Source of the DNA: Chlorokybus atmophyticus
Lineage: Eukaryota > Plantae > Mesostigma and Chlorokybus algae
Assembly (NCBI GenBank): GCA_009103225.1
Contig: RHPI01000273.1
Location: 60,010 to 124,009 of the forward strand
DNA: 64,000 nucleotides
Direction of reading: 5' to 3'
This document shows, piece by piece, positions 9,208 through 54,023 of this stretch (positions are counted from its first letter, which is position 1; the number at the start of each line of letters is the position of its first letter). Position numbers and translations under genes: made by a program. Below the pieces are notes generated by a model. It was not told where the DNA came from and ran no database searches. It saw only the letters and a program-made list of their open reading frames with translations.

Positions 9208-11376
9208 TCAAAGTGCAATGGAGGCATGGCTGGCCCCCAGCGTCCCTCTGGACAGTCCCCCGCTCCTGTGCATCTGCCTCTGTCGCTTTGCCTCCATCCC
9301 CGCGATCTCCACCTTGCGGGACCAGTCGGACACGGAGGCGGAGAGCTGGGAGACGCGGTGGGACAAACGGATGTACTCAAGGGCCTGGGAGGGAGGAGGA
9401 GAGGATGAGAATGCAGCAGCAGAAGCAACGCGGGAGGCAAAGGTGGGTGAGTACCCGTGTCTGTGCGCGGGTGTGTAGGACGTGCGTGTGTATGCGCGCG
9501 TGCATGCTTGTGCGTGCGTGCGTGCTTGTGCGTCCGTGCGCACGGGCTTTCATGCTTGTGAAGGTGCGTGGGTGTACTTGCAAGTGAGTATGTCCATTGG
9601 ATTGCGTGTGTGTGCGTGTGCATCCTTGTGAGCATGCGTGTTTATGGTCGTGTGTGCTTGGGGTTGCGTATGCGTATGCACATGCATGTGTGTATGTGTG
9701 GGNNNNNNNNNNNNNNNNNNNNNNNNNNNNNNNNNNNNNNNNNNNNNNNNNNNNNNNNNNNNNNNNNNNNNNNNNNNNNNNNNNNNNNNNNNNNNNNNNN
9801 NNNNNNNNNNNNNNNNNNNNNNNNNNNNNNNNNNNNNNNNNNNNNNNNNNNNNNNNNNNNNNNNNNNNNNNNNNNNTGGGGTGGGGGTGGGTGGGTGGGT
9901 GGGGGCGTGCGTGCGTGCGTGCTGCAATCCACCACACCATTACTCAACACACCTGAGGTAGTTCGCTCTCTTCCGCCTGCGACCTCAGCGCCCTGACCGC
10001 CTTCTCTTCCGTCATCTTCGCCGCCATCACCGGCGCCAACTCAATCTCAAACTTCTCAATCGCCCCCTTCCTCACCTCCGCCTCCTGCGCCAGCATCGCC
10101 CTCGTCCTCGCCAGCATACCCAACTTCTTCCTCAACCTCGCCAACGCCGCCGCCGTCCTCGCCGACGTGAGCTTCAACCTCAACAACTCGTTGTTTCTCT
10201 CTTCGATCTTCTCCAGAAACTGTTGGTTTTCGATAGTCAACTGGTCGAAGTCGATGGCGTGTAACACTTCGCCGACTTCTTCCTTTTGGGCTAGTGCGGC
10301 TTCGAGCTTTGTGCATTTGGATTTGAGGGTGGAGCATTTGACCTTCAGTTTGTCGACGAGGGCTTCTTTGGAGTGGGAGCGATCGTCGAGCCAACGGGAG
10401 AGCTTCTCGGCGAGGACGGGAGGGGGACGGCGGACGCACGTCACGCCGTCGCCCGCGCCCAACATGTCGCGCCTGCACACATCCGTGTCAATGTGGGTGT
10501 GTGCAGTCAGTAGGCATGGGCTGCCCAGTGCGTGCATGCGTGCGGCGCGCATACGCGCATACGCGCATGTGTGTGTACGTGTTTGTGTCTCTGTATGCGC
10601 GTACGCGCATGCAGTATGCAAGGTTGTTGATGTTGTTTTTGTTTGTGTGTACTTGAACTCGTAGTGATCGCGTCGGGTGTCGGCTATGCGGAGCTCCGCG
10701 CCCTCGATCCCCGCACGTAGCTCATCCATCAGCCGTGTCTCCTCCGACCTCGCACGCTCTATGGCATCCTAAACAACAAGAGGGGATTGTGTTATTGGCA
10801 CGTACATTGGCAATGGTTGACAAGACATGTCTCTGATGAAATGGCATACTTCCTTACTTTGAGGGAGTCTATCTGCGTGGATGCAATCTCGTACTTCTCG
10901 TCCACTGTGAGCGCACGCTCAACCCTCTTTGGCTCAGCTTCAACCTGTGTATCACGTTGTGATGAGTCAACGATCTGTCGGCTATGCTACACGTGCGTCA
11001 TCATGCATTCGACCTGTCCAGACCACATTGCTCGGAGTTTGCAACACACGTGTAGCCCACACGCGGCGGCGCGCCCACATACATACACACAGGGACTCAC
11101 TTTGCCATTGCTGGGGTTATTGTTGTTGGCGCCTTGTGCGCCTTTGCCATTAGCTTGCTGCCCCGCAGGCGTTCTCTTCCCCCCTCCTCCTCCTCCTACG
11201 CTAGTACCGCTTCGCCCAGAGTGCTCCTCCGCCGCCGCCTCTTCAGTTGGGTGCACCGAGGCGGTCGAGGTGGCGCTCCTGGCCTGGAGGTTGGACTCGA
11301 GGAGACGGATCTCGGCACGCAGGAGGTCGTTGCCCTTACGCAGAGAGTCGTAGGCCTGACGCTCAGACGCCGCCAT
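9208..11376 (-). CDS. CCDC113: Ciliary coiled-coil protein CCDC113/CFAP263 (DUF4201)
   Basis: Exons give LTVDEKYEIA..., LHAIDFDQLTIENQQFLEKIEERNNELLRLKL... and LPQ/ALEYI...VSDWSRKVEIA, which match the CCDC113 rather than the CCDC96 pattern. ATG at 11376, stop at 9208. Confidence 0.85.
9703..9876. other. Assembly gap (N run) in a CCDC113 intron
   Basis: N run. Confidence 1.
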
Positions 11377-11644: not shown

Positions 11645-17308
<5,664 letters not shown>

Positions 17309-24107: not shown

Positions 24108-26988
24108 TCATGAGGTCAATTTCCTCCGCTTTGCATCCTGCTCCCGGCTACTATCATCTGTCTGCTTTACCTCTACCTTGCAGACCGCATCGCTGCATGC
24201 ACAATTACTTCAGCACACAGAACACGCACAAACACCACACAGTCAACTGCAATCACAACGTGTTAAACAGACTGTGAGCTGACGCACCCTGCATGTGCGG
24301 ATGGTGCAGAGAAGTCCGAGCTCGTCAGCAGCGTGGGTGTTGTGGAATGCATCGGCGTCAAGATACCTCGCTGCACACCACAAGTAAGAACTTGTTGTAT
24401 GCTTGAATAAGCTACAGAAGTCTCCACACCAATGGCATCTGTCAGCACGTACCCCCAAGCATTTTGAGGGAGATGGCCAGTCAATGTTTGCAAGAGTAAA
24501 GGGTGTCATGTTCAGCGTCCCGGGCGTCTCAAGGTTTGGAGTTGGCAAGTCGGAAATCGCTTGGTTTAGCGTCCGAGCCGACATCAAACCATCCTGTAGT
24601 GGCAACAAAACATCAGCCATCGTGCCACATAACATCGTCAACACAGCTGAGCCAACAGGAGAGGCATGCCTGCTTTCAATCCCTCCTACTGCGGATGTGA
24701 TGCACTGGCAAATTTGCTGTATGGCAAGCTGGCAAAGAGCGTCACCTTTGGTGTTGCAAGCTCAGGCATTGCGCGAAGGTCCATTGGTGATGGCAAGGAT
24801 GCTCCAATCTGGCGCTTCAAATCAAGAGGAGTGTCGGCCATGTCCATTGGCGTTGGGAGCTCCATGAAGTTGTGTTCAATGTTTGCACTGGAGTGTTGCA
24901 CTGGAGGTGGAGGCGGCATGGCATTGCTGCCTGGTGCACCACCCGCAAGAACACAAACAAATGAGTGAAGCAAGTGAGAGGAACTGGTCTCTTCTGCACA
25001 GGCATCATGTTCAGCATACCTGGTCGGCTTGCTGTGGTCACCTTGGCAGGTCCCGTGCGCACTAATGCATTCATGTTTGCAGGAGGTGCATTGGACGGCA
25101 CGCCCTTTGCATTCAGCACAGGAGCCTTGCCTTTGGCAGCAGCAGAAATGGCATTGGCGGCAGCCGCTGCGGCCACAGCTGACTGGCCGGTGTTGACAAC
25201 GCCAACGTGGGGCTGTTGCCTTGAGTTCTTACCCTTCTTCGCATCACCAACATTTATCGGCTGCAACATGCACACAGTCAACCTCGCGGTATGATCAGGG
25301 CAGTACAAGTGCAATTGAAGAACCCAAATACATGAAGCAGACAATTACAAGTGGTTCTCAGGCAGCAATCAACGATATACCTTGGAATCGTTGATGGGAA
25401 TGACAATGGACAAGTCTCGCTTGCCGGATTTGCGTGATGAAGAGGGCGCGTTCGGGCTACCCATGCTGTCCTGCATACCTAGTCTACCAAGAAGTGCCGA
25501 CTGACCGGGGAACTTGGAGTTGTGACCCATGATGCCACTCATGAGCGGCATCATGTTGTTGGGTGCGGGTGCTCCATGCCTCGGAAGCGGGGAATTTAGG
25601 GACGAAAAGAAGCTCTGCTTTAACCCCAGTGAAGAAGGGCCCAAGCCTCGCGGAGAGGCCATTGGCATGAAAAAACTAGTAGGGGACTGTGTGATGCGTG
25701 CCAAACAGCTTAGCAACGCATTGCCGCAAGCATACACGAATGCATGCAACACCAGACAAAGCGTGCACCTGCTCTGTTGACATGGACACATGCTGGCTCA
25801 TGAAGTCGAATTCCTGGTTTATCCGATGGTAGGCTTTCTCACTGCGGGGAGTCAGCGCGTAGGGATTGGGATCATTATGCAGACCAGGAGGTCTGAATCC
25901 ATCAGCGCCTCCCGCCATAGGGTTCATGAAACTACAGCAGACGAGCACAGATCAGAGCAGCTCACAATGCTGCAACTGCGTGCATCAGGCAGGCAGATAC
26001 TTGCTTGTTCACGCTTCCAGCCATAGCTGACAGTGGGTAAAAGAGTGCAGGACGACAGTGCTGGCACTGGATAGGATACCCACTGTACAACCAAAGCAAG
26101 CTTCTACAATGTAAGTCCCACGCAGGCAGGATTGATTACCTTCCTTCAAATGAAATGGGGTGTGCGTGGTCCTGGTTCGCTGCTTCGGATGCTGCTGGTA
26201 GCGCTTGCCGAGGTGCACCCTGCGTACTCGGCACGGTTCCGAGCGCCACCGCATCAACACTTGGGGCTTCTTGTTTGATTTCAGTCTGCAACCACAACAG
26301 ACCAGCGCAAACACGGTCAGCATCCGGATCAAGAAGTGTCACCAAACAATGTCCAACCAGGAGGCCTGACTGCTTTGATAGCGCATGGTGTGCGATCCAC
26401 AACATGATAAACAATATGAAACATGAGTACCTTGACTTGCGCTTGCAAATCTGCTCCTCCAATAGCTTCATCTCCATCATCGTCGCTGTCATCTTTATTG
26501 GAGTTGCTATTGAGTTGGGATGCAAAATGTTGCGTGAAGAGCTGCATAACGAAAGCAATGGTCAGACAAGCCGGACAAAACGGAGGGCGGGGGGAGAGGG
26601 AAGAGTATCGTCAACCCGGCGTGGCCATATGTATGCGTGTGATGTATTTGCGCTGAACTCACATCTTGGTTGTTGCGCTTTTCATGGGGTTCATGGCACA
26701 TTGTAGAGTACTTGCCCAGGATGGTGTCCATCTCACTCGAGCAGTACTGAAAGAGCTTGTTATTGCTGTTGAAGATAACGAGCGCGATGTCGCAATCACA
26801 AAGCACACTCAGCTCCATTGCTTTCTTCATGAGACCGTTTTTCCGTTTTGTAAAGGTGACCTGCGCCAAAGCACCTCAGCAACAGATGCAAACCCTGCAC
26901 AGTTGACAGCTGCCAGCTGCACAGACAAACATACCTGCCGATTTCTTTCATCGGCTATCCTCTCGATACGAATTTTTTTCCGCCCCAT
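24108..26988 (-). CDS. MEF2-type (type II) MADS-box transcription factor without K domain
   Basis: About 11 exons starting 26988-26935, 26860-26663, 26541-26431, 26285-26140 and ending at stop 24108-24110. The N-terminus [57 protein letters not shown]...[10 protein letters not shown] is a MADS+MEF2 domain. It is followed by a long low-complexity tail ending AKRRKLTS. Confidence 0.93.
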
Positions 26989-29900
26989 CCTCTGCAAGTA
27001 CAATAATAGCTATTAAGCTCAGCTTTCGGCAAAAACGCACTCAAGACAAGGTTGATCGGCATCAAGGCAAGAAACACATGCCAAGGCGTGGACCGGTCCA
27101 GACGTGGACAGCATCAAGGTGTACGGACATTGCCCACCCAAGCAGGAGCACACAGAAAGAGCCTGGCGCAAGACACGACGGGGCTGATTGAAACAAGATT
27201 GTTCCAAACAGCGACAGTTACTTTGTTAGCTCACTGGCTTGGGTGCGCGGTCAAGGTTGATTGCAAAAGCAGCGGAACCAATCATCAGCCTGCTGGCTCT
27301 GCAATTGCCTTACGGCTGGCATGACCACTACGAGACACAGCCTACCAGAACTTTAGTCGCTCCAACTAGTGCCTGGCTCTTGACAGCAGCTGTTTACTGC
27401 AGAGCGAATATCTGCTACTGGCACTACCGATCAACTCTTTAGCAAACACCTCTCCCAACTACAGCATCATTGGTTCACACCCGTCAGTTGATTGTGATCG
27501 GAGCATCAACTGCTTCACCAAACACACCTGATCCATCATTCAACGTTAAGATCGTGTTGTGCGACAGTCAACATGCTTTGAAGGTGACAGCAACTCTCAC
27601 CACAGCTGACTTGTACCCTTACTGTGCTCAGATCGGCGTTCAACCCGCTAGATATAATGATGTGTTTCAGCCCTACATGAGCTTGACTGCCTCCAAACAG
27701 CATGTGGGCGGTGCAAGCAAGCTCCGATCTGAGGGGCGTTGCGTAGCAAGCTCCGATCGGAGCAATGCAACAAGCGATCTGGAGGCTAGTTGATTGAGGG
27801 CAAGCTTGATGTTTAGAGTAACTTACAGCTTGGGCGGCCCCGCCCGCCAGTGGTGGGGCGGGGCGGGAAGGGGTTCCCGCCTCCGCGCAGCTACGCCCGG
27901 TCGCGCGAGTGGCCGCCGTCGCGGCTGGCAGATGGCGCCGTGACGGCGCCCCCCATCCACCGGCGGTGGTGGTGCTGGTGTTGGTGGCGCCTCCGACAGC
28001 CGGAGCAGCAACCGCCGCCGCCTTGCCCCCGCCCCCTCTCCCGCCTCCGCCCCGCTCCGTCACTGCGGCTCCAGGCACGGATGACACCGTGCCCACCCCG
28101 CCGCCATGGCCGAGCAGCAGCCGACCAGCTGATCCTCCCTCGACCTCGTCTTCCCAACCCTCGCTCACGCCGCCAACCCCGCCGCCTCTGCCGCCGCCGC
28201 CGCCCCTGACACGGTTGAGCAGCAGCAAGCCCTGGGCTAGGACTCTCTCTCACCCTAACTCACAGCAGGCGTTGCGCCGGTTTTAGAAGCTCAGATCGAC
28301 CGCACTCGTGCCGAGGGAGACAGAGCCCCCATACCGCAAAGTCATGAGTAATTAATCACATGTTATGACTCATGGTTCATAAGCCTAAAGCCAAGCTAAG
28401 CCAATTCCTTTCTCGGGGTACCACACCGGGAGAGGATTTATGCATGATGTTGCGTTTCGCTTTGTGTCTCCAACGGTGGGTGTGTTATGGAGGGGAGCGT
28501 TACGGGGGGCAACCGTGAGGGCGGCTTCACTGAGTTCAGTGAAATTGGTGAGCCGAGAGTGATTGCAAGCGCAGGAGTGATCCACTCCGGGTCAAGCATG
28601 TGTACGGATCACGTGAAATCGCTGTCGTGCCAGGTCACGTGCGGTAGCTGGCTGGAACAGCATGTACAGAAGCCTACACCAGCGCACGCGAAATAAAGGA
28701 TAAGTTAGTGCATCCCTCTTTGCCTAAAGCAATGTACATAAGCACATGCAAGTACAATAGCAAGACCCTAGCCAACTATACAAGTCAGCCAACAAAGCAC
28801 TGTGCAGTGTGGACAAGGGTAGTCACTAGCAGTGCAAGAGCAGCAAAGTAGCAAGTTGGCATTGGACAAGCACACAGCAAGGGCAATGCGCTGGCCCTTT
28901 TTGACGCATTAAGCATGCGAGGAGTTTATCACCGTGACAACTGTTGTAACATCGTCATGCTACATTTTACAATAAACGTACATACATATATATACATACA
29001 TGGCTTTTCCGTAACATTTTGTAATTAGCGTGTTATATACACGTATATGCGTTAGCACATATCAATAACTTGGTACCACTTAAAATTCTTTAGCAACGAT
29101 GCACGTACCGTATGGTAGAGTTAGTGTAAATATAAGTATTGATACAAACATTTGCGTAACCGTATTGAATTAATAATTGCTAGGTTACGATCGAACATAA
29201 TAAAAATAATAATACGATGTAATTGATATGTGACGGTTGTAGTGTAACATTTAGCTGAATGCATATCATCATTTATGGCACATACACCGAATGCTTTGAG
29301 GCGCTTTTGAAAGTCCTTCAAAGAGAAGTTTCTTGTTACAGTTTAAAACAACTGCCTTATCCGATTCAGGTTTCAACTATGTTTCAAATAATTGCCTAAT
29401 AAGTGATTATGCCGCAAATAATTAAGCCTCCGCACTATCGTACCTTACCCCTAGCTTAGAGATCAACAATCATTGAGTCTCACGCTTAATTGGTCATAAT
29501 GCGAAGCTGTGACACACACTTATCCGAGTGCATAGCAGACTGCAAGAATAAATAACAACTTTTACCAAGTACTGTCAGTATTGTCAACAACCACCCCACA
29601 TGAGAATGGGAAAAGGCCATTTGAACAACCAGGCTAGGAACCCCACGTACAAGAATACTGTAAGTTCACTTGAGCTCTGTTGGCCAACACAATGTTGGCA
29701 ACACCCTTATGCACTTCCCTTTTCTGCCTTCTGACATAGCGCACCAATAGTCAGGCTTCCTGCATTCCACTGCTGCGTCGATCAACACGAAGAGATAAGA
29801 CCATTGTATCTTGCTCCAAGTCTGCCTTAGAGAAGCTACGTGCATGTGTGACCATGTCACAACGAACTGACATAGCCAAGCTATGTCAAAAAGCAGTACC

Positions 29901-41554: not shown

Positions 41555-42624
41555 AAACGCACATAGTGATTGACACACACACAATGATCCACGCACGTGC
41601 ATGCAATCACCATCGCACAATCATGGTCACACACTTGCGCACAAACACACACGCATCTGCGCAGTCCCACTCGCACCGGTGCACGCATGCACACACACAC
41701 ATAGTCATGCACGCACACAGCAACAATCACACTCTAAGGCACACACGCGCACGCAGTCACATTCGCGCGCACACGCGCACAGTCACACACTGATGCATGC
41801 ACACACACGCATGGTCACAGTCACGCCCCACCCGCCCGTTCACACCCGTGCGCATGCATGCGCGCGTGTGTATGTCCGCTGGTGCCTCTTCTATCTGCAC
41901 GCGTCGCCAACTGCATTCATCTGTGCATGTGTATGCACGTGCGCATGTGCATGTGCCTGCATGACCCTCCTCTCGCCCNCCCCCCCCGAAGTATCCTTAG
42001 TTCAACAGTACTGTTTCGTCTTCATACATGTGCACAGAGGACTGCAACAAGACTACCAACAAAAGGGAAGTGTTCTGGAGTCTTGGAGGCCGAAAAGCAT
42101 GCACGAGTTCATAATTGCGGTGGAGCACGCGAGCCACGAGCAGTTCCAGCAACAAGCGCTGAATGAAGAGCGGTTTGCGGCGCAAGCAGCACTGATTCGA
42201 GAGCTTCTGGCAACAATCAAATCAGGTGTGCTTTTGTGCGCATGGTGCTTAGCACCATGCGCACAAAAGCACACCTGAGGCGCGCATATGTCAGTCAAAC
42301 AGTGTACAAACTTGTGACTGCATGCGTGCGCGCACGCATGTGTCCGCCAACGCGTGCGCATGCGTGAGCGTACGTTGCACTCGCATCTGCTTGAGCCAAT
42401 GTGCGTATGTATCTGCGTGTGTGCTTGTGACAATGCGAATGCGTGTCGGCGTTGGCGTCGGCATGTGTCAGAGTCGGCCGGTGTCGGGGTCGGCACTTGG
42501 GCATCTGCATGTTTGCTTGCTTGCTGCACGCGCACGCAGTGGTATGCATTATTGAGCTAACAACCCGTCGCCCTGCAGTGTGCCCAAGCACAGCCAATCG
42601 GACACCCCCTGATGGCGTGGCACC

Positions 42625-42906
<282 letters not shown>

Positions 42907-51599: not shown

Positions 51600-54023
51600 G
51601 GCACTAGGGATGACTGTGCACCCCGACAAGTGCACTGTCTGTACCCACAAGGTTCCCTACCTTGGTCACATGATCGTGCCCAACGGCGTGTAAGTTCGGC
51701 AGGCCAAGGTGGAGGCGTTGGCATCTATCCCAGCCCTTACAGACCTGACCCGACTGCGTGCCTTCCTCGGCCTCGCCAACTACTACAGGAGGTGCGTCAA
51801 AGACTTTGCCAAGGTGGCGCGCCCCCTCAACAAACTTCTCGAGAAGGAGACAGAGTGGAGCTGGAAGGAGGCCCAGCAACAGGCTTGTAAAGAGCTGAAG
51901 CGGAGGCTCACCTCAGCCCCCATCCTACAGCGACCAAACTGCACCAAACCCTTTATTCTTCATACCGACTAAAGCAAGCTCGGCATGGGCAATGTATTGG
52001 TTCAGCTCGACAACAACAAGAGGGAGCGGGTGATGTCCTACGCCAGCCGCAGCAACGACAGCGCTGAGGCCAACTACAGCAGTTACGAAGGCGAATGCCT
52101 TGCTGCAGTATGGGCCATCTCCTTCTTCAGACCTTTTCTGTTCGGAAGCCAATGTCTACTGATCACCGACCACCAACCACTGCGCTGGTTCATGACCAAC
52201 CAGCACCTTACGGGCAAGTTGGCCAGGTGGGCTCTGCTGCTACAGGAGTACGACTTCGAGACCACCCACCGGGCAGAACTTGTCAACCAGGACGCAGACG
52301 CTCTCAGTCGCAACCCCCACCTTTCCACCGACGACACCAGTGGTGCCCGACATGAGCTGAGTCCAGAGGCACCACCACCGCAGGTGGCCACCATGTTTGC
52401 CGTAGCTGCATTGCGCTCGGGACGGGATACCATCACAGGAGCGGCTCCGACAATGCCGGAAACAGAGGACATGCCAGCGCTCACCCCCGTCGACACCGAC
52501 TCAGCTGAACAGACCACGCCAGATGATGCCCAACTCCCGGCTGCAGACATAGGTCAAGTCATCTGATTGGACAAGAACTCCATGATCTACCTACAACATG
52601 GACAACAGGTGGCAGGACTAAGCGCGCGCAAGCGTGACCGCGTCAGGCAGCGTTGTTAGAACTACCGCTGGGAGGATGGACTCGTGTTCCAACGGGTCCA
52701 CATCCATAACAAGGAGGTACCGGCTTCGCACCGACGCGAGGGCATCGTTGCTGTATTCCACATAGAGTTGGGGCACTTCGGTATCATGCGCACCGTCAGC
52801 TTGGTGAGTGCCCAATACTGGTGGCATGGCATGCACACCCAGGTTCGCGCCTTTGTTGCGAACTGCACGCACTGCGACCTGGTGCGCGCCAGCATCAACA
52901 CCCGCACCAGCACGCTGCACCCACTCCCTATCGCCGGCATGTTCTACCGGTGGGGACTGGACATCCTTGGAGATCTAGCACCCTCAGCTCGTGGCAACAA
53001 TTACATCCTCGTCATGATCGAACACTTTTCGAAGTGGGTTGAGCTGGTCCCCCTTTCCGACAAAAGCAGCAGAGGAACCGCTCAGGCTTTCCTAAGCCAT
53101 GTGCTTAGTCATTTTGGCTCATGCGCTGAAGTCATCACCGACCAGGGAGGGCGGAGTTCCGCGGCGAGTTCGACACCTTGCTCGATCGTTCCTACATTGA
53201 CCACCGGCGCACCTTACGTGACCATCCGCAGGCGGATGGGCTGGCGGAACGTACGGTCCAGCCCATCAAGAAGGCCTTGCGCAAGTACCTCATCGACCAC
53301 GAGAAGCGCACCTGGGATGACTACCTCCCCTGGATAGCCTTGGGCTATCGAGTGTCCAAGCAAGCTTCCTTGCGCATGTACAGCCCGTATCAGCTGTTGT
53401 TTGGCAGGGAACCCTTACTCCCCTTCCGCGCATAAAAAGAGGTGGAACGCGTGCTGGACAACCTCAACAACATTGTGGCTATGCTGCACGACATGCAATA
53501 GCGCGCTTACCTGTTCGCACACGTCATCCCCATGGCCATGGGCAGTCCCCGCATCGCTCAACATCGGGACACACTGCGCTATGAACGCGTCCGCAGTGGG
53601 TTCTACAAACAGCGCAGTCGCCGCTTCAAAGCGGGCAACTATGTCTACTGCATGATCTAAACCAAGGACACCCTTGACATCAGTGTCAAGTGTGTCGTCT
53701 ACAAGGTCCTGAAGGTACTCCCCTCTGGAGTGCTGGATTTGCTTGGCAACAACGGCGAGCGCCTCGAGAACAGCATGGAGAACTGCGCTCCATGTCACCT
53801 GCCACATATTGCAGGCTTCGACGTCATTCAACACCCTCAACCCAGTCGCAGCAAGCGTCGCGAGAAGTGCGGCAGTGCCGACAACGACGCACTCATGATG
53901 TTGTGCAACGGCTGCAACAGTGGTATGCACTGCTACTACCTCGACCTGCCAAAAGACACTGTGCCTCTGGAGGCATATCAGTGTGAAGACTGCCGCGTCC
54001 GTGGTCCTCCTCATTCTCGCTAA
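51600..54023 (+). mobile_element. Ty3/gypsy LTR retrotransposon pol remnant (RT C-terminus, RNase H, integrase, C-terminal PHD finger), 5'-truncated and pseudogenised
   Basis: Domain order RT (HPDKC...VPYLGH, LRAFLGLANYYRR) > RNase H (FILHTD, YSSYEGECLAAVWA, TDHQPL) > integrase (H...GHFG...C..C; RWGLDILG, VITDQG, HPQADGLAER) > PHD. It has many nonsense codons and a frameshift near 53150. Confidence 0.93.

What the first reader, a model, noticed from the sequence alone, without database searches (positions are those of the whole stretch)
25799..25861. Green-lineage MADS protein retains the animal MEF2 alpha/HJURP_C-like motif
Exon 5 encodes [25 protein letters not shown]. As I recall it, the vertebrate MEF2C alpha2 segment is SSYALTPRTEEKYKKINEEFDNM, giving 14 of 21 identities; this needs database confirmation. 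This module (Pfam HJURP_C) is normally described for metazoan MEF2, and land-plant type II genes have a K domain at this position. No K-like heptads are visible here. With the docking motif, SUMO consensus, NLS and c.54 intron, the gene looks like a near-intact ancestral eukaryotic MEF2, informative for how MIKC genes arose.
Basis: partly seen in the sequence, partly recalled or inferred. Interest (0 to 1): 0.82.

Follow-up and report, generated by a model that had tools for sequence, protein, structure and literature searches.

The report
Animal-type MEF2 motif in green alga
A MADS-box transcription factor gene of the early-branching green alga Chlorokybus carries the same short regulatory helix that sits behind the DNA-binding domain of animal MEF2 proteins. 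The helix is also found in many other green algae and in amoebae, so it is an ancient MEF2 feature and not an animal invention.

Summary
Window 25861..25799 (minus strand) encodes [21 protein letters not shown], inside exon 5 of an 11-exon gene. The gene's product is 100% identical to the JGI Chlorokybus atmophyticus model Chrsp149S00119 (570 aa).

The peptide matches amphibian MEF2C alpha2 at 14 of 21 residues; the next best 21-mer in the window scores 8. With the MADS/MEF2 domains removed, a green-algal profile aligns to an animal MEF2 profile on this block (49 columns, E 4.7e-9). The Pfam HJURP_C score is only borderline (19.8-22.7 bits, cut-off 22.7), so databases do not annotate it. No K-box is detected.

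The motif is not special to Chlorokybus. It occurs in Mesostigma, Chara, prasinophytes, Tetraselmis, trebouxiophytes, a pedinophyte, the holozoan Syssomonas, and the amoebozoans Physarum and Mastigella. A docking-like KRDLSIVIP element, a C-terminal basic cluster and the intron after codon 18 are shared too.

AlphaFold2 predicts a confident helix (residues 198-222) that begins right after an invariant Ser/Thr-Pro.

The gene belongs to the already published K-less type II MADS clade of streptophyte algae, and Chlorokybus also has a separate MIKC gene. I found no paper describing the deep conservation of the motif, and a 2011 paper claimed it arose late in animals. Interest is moderate.

The parts
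24108..26988 (-). Coding region of a K-less MEF2-type (type II) MADS-box gene. It has 11 exons, 10 GT-AG introns of 74-208 nt and a 1713-nt CDS. The 570-aa product equals JGI Chlat1 Chrsp149S00119.
   Evidence: the spliced translation equals P0001 plus a stop codon.
26935..26988 (-). Exon 1, 54 nt, [18 protein letters not shown] (aa 1-18).
26861..26934 (-). Intron 1 (74 nt, phase 0) between Q18 and V19. An intron at the same position occurs in Coccomyxa, a pedinophyte and a coral MEF2 gene. It is absent at this position in Myrmecia, and Chara has no intron there.
26663..26860 (-). Exon 2 (aa 19-84): the rest of the MADS domain plus the MEF2 domain. About 72% identical to human MEF2A/C over 86 residues.
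   Evidence: SRF-TF E 5.4e-25, aa 10-57; PDB MEF2A/B/C/D, E about 3e-35, aa 1-86.
26431..26541 (-). Exon 3 (aa 85-121), including the green-type LFTQHFA continuation and an acidic run, DDSDDDGDE.
26140..26285 (-). Exon 4 (aa 122-169). It is poorly conserved and predicted disordered. It ends inside the green-lineage motif ISFEG|SFM.
25769..25931 (-). Exon 5 (aa 170-224), the motif exon. Its flanking introns are at the same positions in Myrmecia, and the upstream one also in Coccomyxa.
25799..25861 (-). The reported 21-residue motif [21 protein letters not shown] (aa 194-214).
25645..25873 (-). The full conserved block (aa 190-238, [10 protein letters not shown]...MPMASPRG) that aligns to the animal MEF2 alpha2 region. 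It spans intron 5.
   Evidence: hhalign, 49 columns, probability 96%, E 4.7e-9.
25775..25849 (-). Predicted alpha-helix, aa 198-222 (mean pLDDT about 87-88 over residues 201-220). It starts at the invariant Pro198 that follows Thr197.
25381..25686 (-). Exon 6 (aa 225-326).
25396..25422 (-). KRDLSIVIP (aa 313-321), an element resembling a MAPK docking (D-domain) site. It is collinear with animal RP(N/D)LRVVIP and amoebozoan KKNLSVVIP.
   Evidence: it is the top or second hit in every profile comparison (green vs Amoebozoa E 1.8e-4; Amoebozoa vs animals E 2.1e-3; green vs animals E 0.16-0.33). Also.
25020..25260 (-). Exon 7 (aa 327-406).
24746..24930 (-). Exon 8 (aa 407-468).
24453..24593 (-). 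Exon 9 (aa 469-515). It includes DWPSPSK, a motif shared with other green algae and Amoebozoa.
   Evidence: (E 0.01).
24288..24370 (-). Exon 10 (aa 516-542).
24108..24192 (-). Exon 11 (aa 543-570 plus the stop codon). It includes CKVE, a weak SUMO-like site.
24120..24131 (-). C-terminal basic cluster KRRK (aa 564-567), a likely nuclear localisation signal. Equivalent clusters end the green-algal, amoebozoan and animal proteins.
   Evidence: The conservation was read by eye and not scored.

Best explanation
The interval is the core of exon 5 of a MEF2-type (type II, K-less) MADS-box transcription factor gene of Chlorokybus atmophyticus. It encodes a module homologous to the alpha2-exon / Pfam 'HJURP_C' region that follows the MADS and MEF2 domains of animal MEF2 proteins.

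Shown here:
- The module is a conserved L-[ST]-P-[RK] site followed directly by a helix of about 25 residues. The helix has one conserved hydrophobic stripe (Y204, I207, F211, M214, V218).
- It is separated from the DNA-binding core by about 100 disordered, acidic residues.
- The same module occurs in the same place in MEF2-type proteins of many green algae, of Amoebozoa and of Holozoa. It is therefore inherited from a very early eukaryotic MEF2 gene, not gained in animals.
- It comes with two further collinear elements: a docking-like K-R-x-L-S-[IV]-x-I-P element and a C-terminal basic cluster.

Inferred:
- The helix is a binding surface for a co-regulator, that is, an activation or repression interface. 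In mammals the corresponding alpha exons decide between HDAC and ASH2L recruitment.
- Its use is switched by a proline-directed kinase acting on Thr197, most likely a MAP kinase recruited through the docking-like element, as in animal MEF2. The yeast Rlm1 parallel is from my memory.

The confidence of 0.8 refers to the identity and homology of the module. The inferred mechanism alone I put at about 0.4.
For: - Sequence and gene model.
- Organism and green affinity: 100% identity to Chlat1 Chrsp149S00119; green clade, 100% bootstrap.
- Homology of the motif without the MADS domain: probability 96%, E 4.7e-9, 49 columns; a 48-column motif profile finds 353 representatives at E<=1e-3 and 81 at E<=1e-10; among the best 150, every hit that retains its N-terminus carries a MEF2-type MADS domain, and the rest are fragments with the same motif.
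- Chance control.
- Pfam HJURP_C at or near threshold.
- Distribution. Taxa are Mesostigma, Chara CbMADS3, Pyramimonas, Cymbomonas, Tetraselmis, Coccomyxa, Elliptochloris, Myrmecia, Apatococcus, Trebouxia, a pedinophyte, Syssomonas, Physarum and Mastigella.
- Invariant Pro198, and Ser/Thr at 197 in all aligned sequences.
- Helix 198-222 with pLDDT about 87-88.
- Docking-like element.
- Shared introns.
- Function of the animal alpha exons (PKA/HDAC versus ASH2L; phospho-Ser/PIN1): review PMC5852603.
Against: - The formal Pfam gathering score is missed by the full-length protein (19.8 vs 22.7 bits) and by every other green-algal protein tested (none to 20.3 bits).
- There is no functional, expression or phosphorylation evidence for any algal protein.
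- The docking-like element is not significant against animals on its own (E 0.16-0.33).
- The AlphaFold2 model is a monomer without DNA (pTM 0.34). It cannot tell whether the helix binds a partner or folds back on the core.
- Some green lineages have lost or strongly diverged the motif: several metagenome protein clusters with a green-type MADS domain lack it.
- Only three major eukaryotic groups were shown to have the motif. SAR, fungi, red algae and excavates were not assessed.
Confidence: 0.8

Rival explanations
1. The helix is a constitutive structural extension of the DNA-binding and dimerisation core. It would fold back on the MADS/MEF2 dimer or add a short coiled-coil contact between subunits, and would not be a regulated co-factor docking site.
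For: The hydrophobic positions have heptad-like spacing, and the helix is predicted with a confidence close to that of the core. In land-plant MIKC proteins a helical dimerisation domain (K) occupies the equivalent position (PMC10484287).
Against: About 100 poorly conserved, low-confidence residues separate it from the core in Chlorokybus, and the linker length varies widely between species. The invariant Ser/Thr-Pro directly in front of the helix suggests regulation. Mammalian constructs of residues 1-95 bind DNA and dimerise without it, as shown by the PDB entries. The mammalian alpha exons change co-factor choice (PMC5852603).
Confidence: 0.2
2. The resemblance to animal MEF2 is convergence of a short linear motif and does not reflect common descent.
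For: The conserved core is short, about 21-30 residues. Short phospho-regulated motifs do arise repeatedly.
Against: There are 49 aligned columns at E 4.7e-9 with the MADS domain excluded. The position relative to the MEF2 domain, the docking-like element and the C-terminal basic cluster is the same in three major groups. The motif profile finds only MEF2-type proteins among its best 150 hits in 1.84 billion representatives.
Confidence: 0.04
3. The locus is a contaminant, or a recent transfer from an animal or amoeba into the Chlorokybus assembly.
For: The MADS/MEF2 core is unusually similar to animal MEF2, about 72% identical over 86 residues.
Against: The closest relatives over the full length are green algae. 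The green clade has 100% bootstrap. The motif variant (SEKAY, not TEEKY) and the QHFA continuation are green-type. Intron positions are shared with Myrmecia and Coccomyxa. K-less type II genes are reported from all charophyte classes (PMC12447436).
Confidence: 0.02

Closest known systems
Animal MEF2A/C/D alpha2-exon region (annotated by Pfam as HJURP_C, PF12347)
   Same: Same position after the MADS and MEF2 domains. Same core, L-T-P-R-x-E-x-x-Y-x-x-I-N-x-E-F-D-x-M, with 14 of 21 residues identical to amphibian MEF2C alpha2. Encoded within a single exon. Followed downstream by a docking-like ...L-x-V-x-I-P element and a C-terminal basic cluster. The intron after codon 18 is shared with a coral MEF2 gene.
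   Different: Chlorokybus has a single copy of the exon, with no mutually exclusive alpha1/alpha2 pair. The linker from the MEF2 domain is about 100 residues, against about 20 in animals. The green consensus is SE(K/R)AY, not TEEKY. The Pfam score is below the cut-off for the full-length protein.
[quoted passage not shown]
   Same: This gene belongs to that clade. It has a MEF2-like MADS domain and no K-box, and it coexists with a MIKC paralogue in the same genome. Chara CbMADS3 (P0013) carries the same motif.
   Different: Nothing in kind. In the text I could read, those papers do not connect the post-MADS motif with the animal alpha/HJURP_C region. Their supplements were not available to me.
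Land-plant and charophyte MIKC-type proteins
   Same: A type II MADS domain followed by an I/MEF2-like helix. A helical protein-interaction region lies downstream of the DNA-binding core.
   Different: There is no K-box. The helix here is a single stretch of about 25 residues after a long disordered linker, whereas the K domain is about 70 residues and multi-helical.
Amoebozoan MEF2-type proteins (Physarum polycephalum P0289, Mastigella eilhardi P0296)
   Same: Same three-part layout: GL-x-NDP-x-Y-x-LTPR... helix, then KKNLSVVIP, then a C-terminal KKPK cluster. The NDP-x-x-Y-x-LTPR lead-in is nearly identical to Chlorokybus [11 protein letters not shown].
   Different: The helix consensus differs (TAQKYKIVNKKYED). 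The MADS domain forms a separate clade.
HJURP C-terminal repeats (the name-giving members of PF12347)
   Same: Only the shared Pfam model.
   Different: A profile built from the MEF2 motif alone returned no protein without MEF2 features among its best 150 hits. It returned no HJURP chain from the PDB at E<=10. Nothing here supports a link to centromere biology.

Membership tests
MEF2-type (type II) MADS-box transcription factors | N-terminal MADS (SRF-TF) domain | tested here: met
   PF00319, E 5.4e-25, aa 10-57.
MEF2-type (type II) MADS-box transcription factors | MEF2 domain directly after the MADS domain; overall closer to MEF2 than to SRF/MCM1 | tested here: met
   PDB MEF2A/B/C/D chains align over aa 1-86 at E about 3e-35. 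SRF and MCM1 score about 1e-7 to 1e-9.
MEF2-type (type II) MADS-box transcription factors | Dimeric binding to A/T-rich MEF2 sites | not testable with these tools
   Needs EMSA, DAP-seq or a similar assay.
Pfam HJURP_C (PF12347) / MEF2 alpha-exon region | Score at or above the Pfam gathering cut-off (22.7 bits) | tested here: inconclusive
   The exon alone scores 22.7 bits, the first 326 aa 22.4 bits and the full protein 19.8 bits. Other green-algal proteins score from no hit to 20.3 bits.
Pfam HJURP_C (PF12347) / MEF2 alpha-exon region | Significant similarity to the animal MEF2 region that does not depend on the MADS domain, at the same relative position | tested here: met
   hhalign of the tails: probability 96%, E 4.7e-9, 49 columns. 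The motif profile retrieves animal, green and amoebozoan MEF2 proteins together.
Vertebrate alpha1/alpha2 mutually exclusive exon system | Two tandem alternative copies of the motif exon | tested here: not met
   Only one 21-mer in the six-frame translation of the whole window resembles the motif; the next best has 8 of 21 identities. Introns 4 and 5 are 208 and 82 nt.
MIKC-type MADS proteins | K-box (PF01486) downstream of the I domain | tested here: not met
   No K-box hit at E<=10 for aa 1-326, or at E<=1 for the full protein and 17 relatives.
MAPK-regulated MEF2/Rlm1-type factors | D-domain docking site (basic residues followed by hydrophobic-x-hydrophobic), conserved with the animal R-K-P-D-L-R-V-V-I-P | tested here: inconclusive
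   KRDLSIVIP fits the pattern and is the best remaining profile match in every comparison. The E-values are 1.8e-4 (green vs Amoebozoa), 2.1e-3 (Amoebozoa vs animals) and 0.16-0.33 (green vs animals). Kinase binding is not testable here.
MAPK-regulated MEF2/Rlm1-type factors | Phosphorylation at proline-directed Ser/Thr sites | not testable with these tools
   Ser/Thr197-Pro198 is conserved in all aligned sequences, but no phosphorylation data were available.

The most novel reading that the evidence does not exclude
The three-part regulatory layout of MEF2 was already present in the common ancestor of Amorphea and Archaeplastida, that is, at or near the last eukaryotic common ancestor. The three parts are a Ser/Thr-Pro-gated helix, a MAPK docking site and a C-terminal nuclear localisation signal. 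Green algae would then still run a MAPK-to-MEF2 signalling axis like the one in animals and yeast. Land plants would have lost this axis when they kept only the K-box paralogue. A bolder, untested extension is that the K domain grew out of this ancestral amphipathic helix.
Probability: 0.45. Interest if true: 0.65.

Novelty: new member of a known kind. Interest (0 to 1): 0.5.

Why it matters
- **Timing of the motif.** It corrects a published inference that the 'HJURP_C' region was inserted into MEF2 late, within animals (PMC3048864). The region is shared by green algae, Amoebozoa and Holozoa.
- **A conserved non-DNA-binding part.** The K-less type II MADS genes of algae have been treated as a MADS domain plus an uncharacterised tail. 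This result gives them a concrete conserved part outside the DNA-binding domain.
- **A testable hypothesis.** The ancestral type II MADS factor may have been a kinase-regulated, co-factor-switching protein of the MEF2 kind. Plant MIKC proteins would have replaced this module with the K domain.
- **A database gap.** The Pfam cut-off hides the relationship in all the green-algal proteins examined.

Tried and rejected
- **Rfam scan of the whole window:** no match.
- **PDB search with the motif profile:** only chance-level matches (E>=0.7) to unrelated chains. No solved structure contains the motif, and neither HJURP nor the SEP3 K domain was hit.
- **Literature search for a known phospho-threonine at the equivalent MEF2 position:** it returned nothing relevant. 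The phospho-switch therefore remains an inference.
- **Supplementary motif tables of PMC12447436:** not held. I could not check whether their MEME motifs include this block.
- **Literature searches for HJURP_C together with MADS, algae or Capsaspora:** only animal papers were found.
- **An early misreading:** I first took 'Colp12' (P0101) for a colponemid. The EukProt accession shows it is the holozoan Syssomonas multiformis.
- **Taxon of MMETSP protein P0039:** it is sister to the green clade in the NJ tree, but its taxon could not be established.
- **Contaminant and convergence explanations:** considered and rejected; see the rival explanations.
- **K domain versus the motif helix:** the relation was not tested because no charophyte MIKC sequence was in hand.
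Full report
**Observation.** The gene lies on the minus strand. Reading 25873..25799 gives [25 protein letters not shown], and the reported interval 25861..25799 is exactly [21 protein letters not shown], aa 194-214. Xenopus tropicalis MEF2C isoform X3 has YALTPRTEEKYKKINEEFDIM and Mixophyes MEF2C has YALTPRTEEKYNKINEEFDNM. Both give 14 of 21 identities. I scored every 21-mer in the six-frame translation of the window, 127,876 in all. The reported one scores 14 and the next best scores 8.

**Gene and organism.** I assembled eleven exons joined by ten GT-AG introns of 74-208 nt, spanning 26988..24108. The 1713-nt CDS translates exactly to protein P0001, which the database names jgi/Chlat1/1913/Chrsp149S00119, that is, Chlorokybus atmophyticus. 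Exon 1 is 54 nt and ends after Q18. Exon 5 (25931..25769) carries the motif.
- The N-terminus is a MADS domain (PF00319, E 5.4e-25).
- It is followed by a MEF2 domain. Human MEF2A/B/C/D chains align over residues 1-86 at E about 3e-35 and about 72% identity. SRF and MCM1 score only 1e-7 to 1e-9.
- No K-box is detected in this protein or in 17 relatives.
- An NJ tree of the MADS/MEF2 core plus the motif places the protein in a green-algal clade with 100% bootstrap. That clade is separate from the amoebozoan and animal clades, so contamination is excluded.

**Is the motif homologous to the animal one?** Pfam HJURP_C gives 22.7 bits for the exon alone, exactly the gathering score. It gives 22.4 bits for the first 326 residues and 19.8 bits for the whole protein. 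Other green-algal proteins reach at most 20.3 bits. This explains why the precomputed annotations list only PF00319 for them.

I ran two tests that do not depend on Pfam.
- I removed the MADS and MEF2 domains from 16 green-type and 10 animal proteins, aligned each set and compared the two profiles. They align over 49 columns, Chlorokybus aa 190-238, with probability 96% and E 4.7e-9.
- I searched 1.84 billion representative proteins with a 48-column profile of the motif alone. It found 353 at E<=1e-3 and 81 at E<=1e-10. Among the best 150, every protein that keeps its N-terminus has a MEF2-type MADS domain. The rest are fragments carrying the green, animal or amoebozoan flavour of the motif.

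**Distribution.** The motif is not peculiar to Chlorokybus.
- Streptophyte algae: Mesostigma viride ([26 protein letters not shown]) and Chara braunii CbMADS3.
- Chlorophytes: Pyramimonas, Cymbomonas, Tetraselmis, Coccomyxa, Elliptochloris, Myrmecia, Apatococcus, Trebouxia and a pedinophyte.
- Outside the green lineage: animals, the unicellular holozoan Syssomonas, and the amoebozoans Physarum polycephalum and Mastigella eilhardi.
- Some protein clusters with a green-type MADS domain, known only from metagenomes, lack it or have diverged.

**Rest of the architecture.**
- The second-best profile match between green and animal tails is [15 protein letters not shown] against TTGRPNLRVVIPSSR.
- This element is the top hit in every comparison of the regions downstream of the motif. 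The E-values are 1.8e-4 (green vs Amoebozoa), 2.1e-3 (Amoebozoa vs animals) and 0.16 (green vs animals).
- In animal MEF2A/C this stretch is the p38 docking domain; that statement is from my knowledge of the MEF2 literature and was not checked here.
- All three groups end in a basic cluster: KRRKLTS here, KKPKTDKT in Physarum and KRPRVTSEGWST in Lineus.
- The phase-0 intron between Q18 and V19 is shared with Coccomyxa, a pedinophyte and a coral MEF2 gene. Myrmecia has its first intron at codon 25, and Chara CbMADS3 has no intron in its first 386 codons.
- The introns flanking the motif exon are at the same positions in Chlorokybus and Myrmecia.

**Likely mechanism.** AlphaFold2, run on a 23-sequence alignment, predicts the MADS/MEF2 core, a disordered stretch (residues about 106-189, pLDDT below 50) and one further confident helix at residues 198-222 (pLDDT about 87-88). 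Pro198 is invariant and residue 197 is always Ser or Thr. Y204 is nearly invariant, as are E201, E210 and F211 in the 24-sequence motif alignment. The remaining positions of the stripe (207, 214, 218) stay hydrophobic in most aligned sequences.

The module is therefore a Ser/Thr-Pro site placed at the N-terminal cap of an amphipathic helix. In mammals the two alternative exons at this position decide whether MEF2D recruits HDAC co-repressors after PKA phosphorylation (alpha1) or the ASH2L co-activator complex (alpha2). A phospho-serine in MEF2C alpha1 recruits PIN1 (review PMC5852603).

From this I infer that the algal helix is a co-regulator docking surface gated by a proline-directed kinase, plausibly a MAPK recruited through KRDLSIVIP. 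This is inference, because no functional data exist for any algal member. The main rival is that the helix is a constitutive structural or dimerisation element.

**What is already known.** K-less type II MADS genes in streptophyte algae, coexisting with MIKC genes and lost in land plants, are described in bioRxiv 10.1101/2023.02.13.528266 and in PMC12447436. The second paper names Chara CbMADS3 (CBR_g21114, our P0013) and a Chlorokybus MIKC gene, CaMADS1 (Chrsp86S07989). The gene itself is therefore a member of a known clade. It shows the state before the duplication and is not a MIKC precursor.

None of the papers I could search links the post-MADS motif of algal proteins to the animal alpha/HJURP_C region. 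PMC3048864 states that the HJURP_C region arose much later than the MADS/MEF2 domains and was inserted into an animal MEF2 gene. The present data contradict that. One JGI metagenome fragment with the green-type motif is automatically labelled 'Holliday junction regulator protein family C-terminal repeat', so annotation pipelines occasionally catch it.

**Verdict.** Novelty lies in the deep conservation of the MEF2 regulatory layout, not in the existence of the gene. Interest is moderate.

Noticed in passing
window 12774-17308 (+): Exons of a polycystin (PKD2-like) cation channel: Polycystin_dom, then PKD_channel (E 2.2e-37), then an EF-hand tail.
   Followed up: partly
window 9944-10729 (-): An exon encoding a CCDC113/CCDC96 coiled-coil protein (E 1.8e-28), a ciliary protein family (family role from my own knowledge).
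   Followed up: partly
window 51985-53337 (+): Pieces of a retrotransposon pol gene: the RT-associated RNase H domain, the integrase zinc-binding domain and the rve core. It is probably a Ty3/gypsy-type element.
   Followed up: partly
window about 9.5 kb, 41.4 kb, 47.2 kb and 49.1-50.1 kb: Runs of N (assembly gaps). The last one produces the apparent GC dip to 0.33 in the composition profile.
   Followed up: no
window about 13450-13700 and 42300-42700: Long (GA)n/(CT)n microsatellites that create spurious long ORFs in several frames.
   Followed up: no
window 26156-25925 (-), aa 165-172: A conserved motif, S-[FM]-S-[ED]-G-S-[FYL]-L (here ISFEGSFM), seen here only in green-algal proteins. It lies upstream of the MEF2-type helix and is split by an intron at the same position in Chlorokybus, Myrmecia and Coccomyxa. 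Its function is unknown.
   Followed up: partly
window 24482-24462 (-), aa 506-512: The DWPSPSK motif near the C-terminus is shared by green-algal and amoebozoan MEF2-type proteins (hhalign E 0.01).
   Followed up: partly
L003 (Chara braunii BFEA01000233.1) 501-1658: Chara CbMADS3 encodes residues 1-386 in one uninterrupted exon, whereas the Chlorokybus orthologue has ten introns. This could reflect intron loss or a retrocopy origin.
   Followed up: no
window 27820-28240: A GC-rich, proline/glycine-codon low-complexity stretch about 0.85-1.25 kb upstream of the start codon of the MADS gene. It creates a 230-aa ORF on the minus strand that is probably not coding.
   Followed up: no
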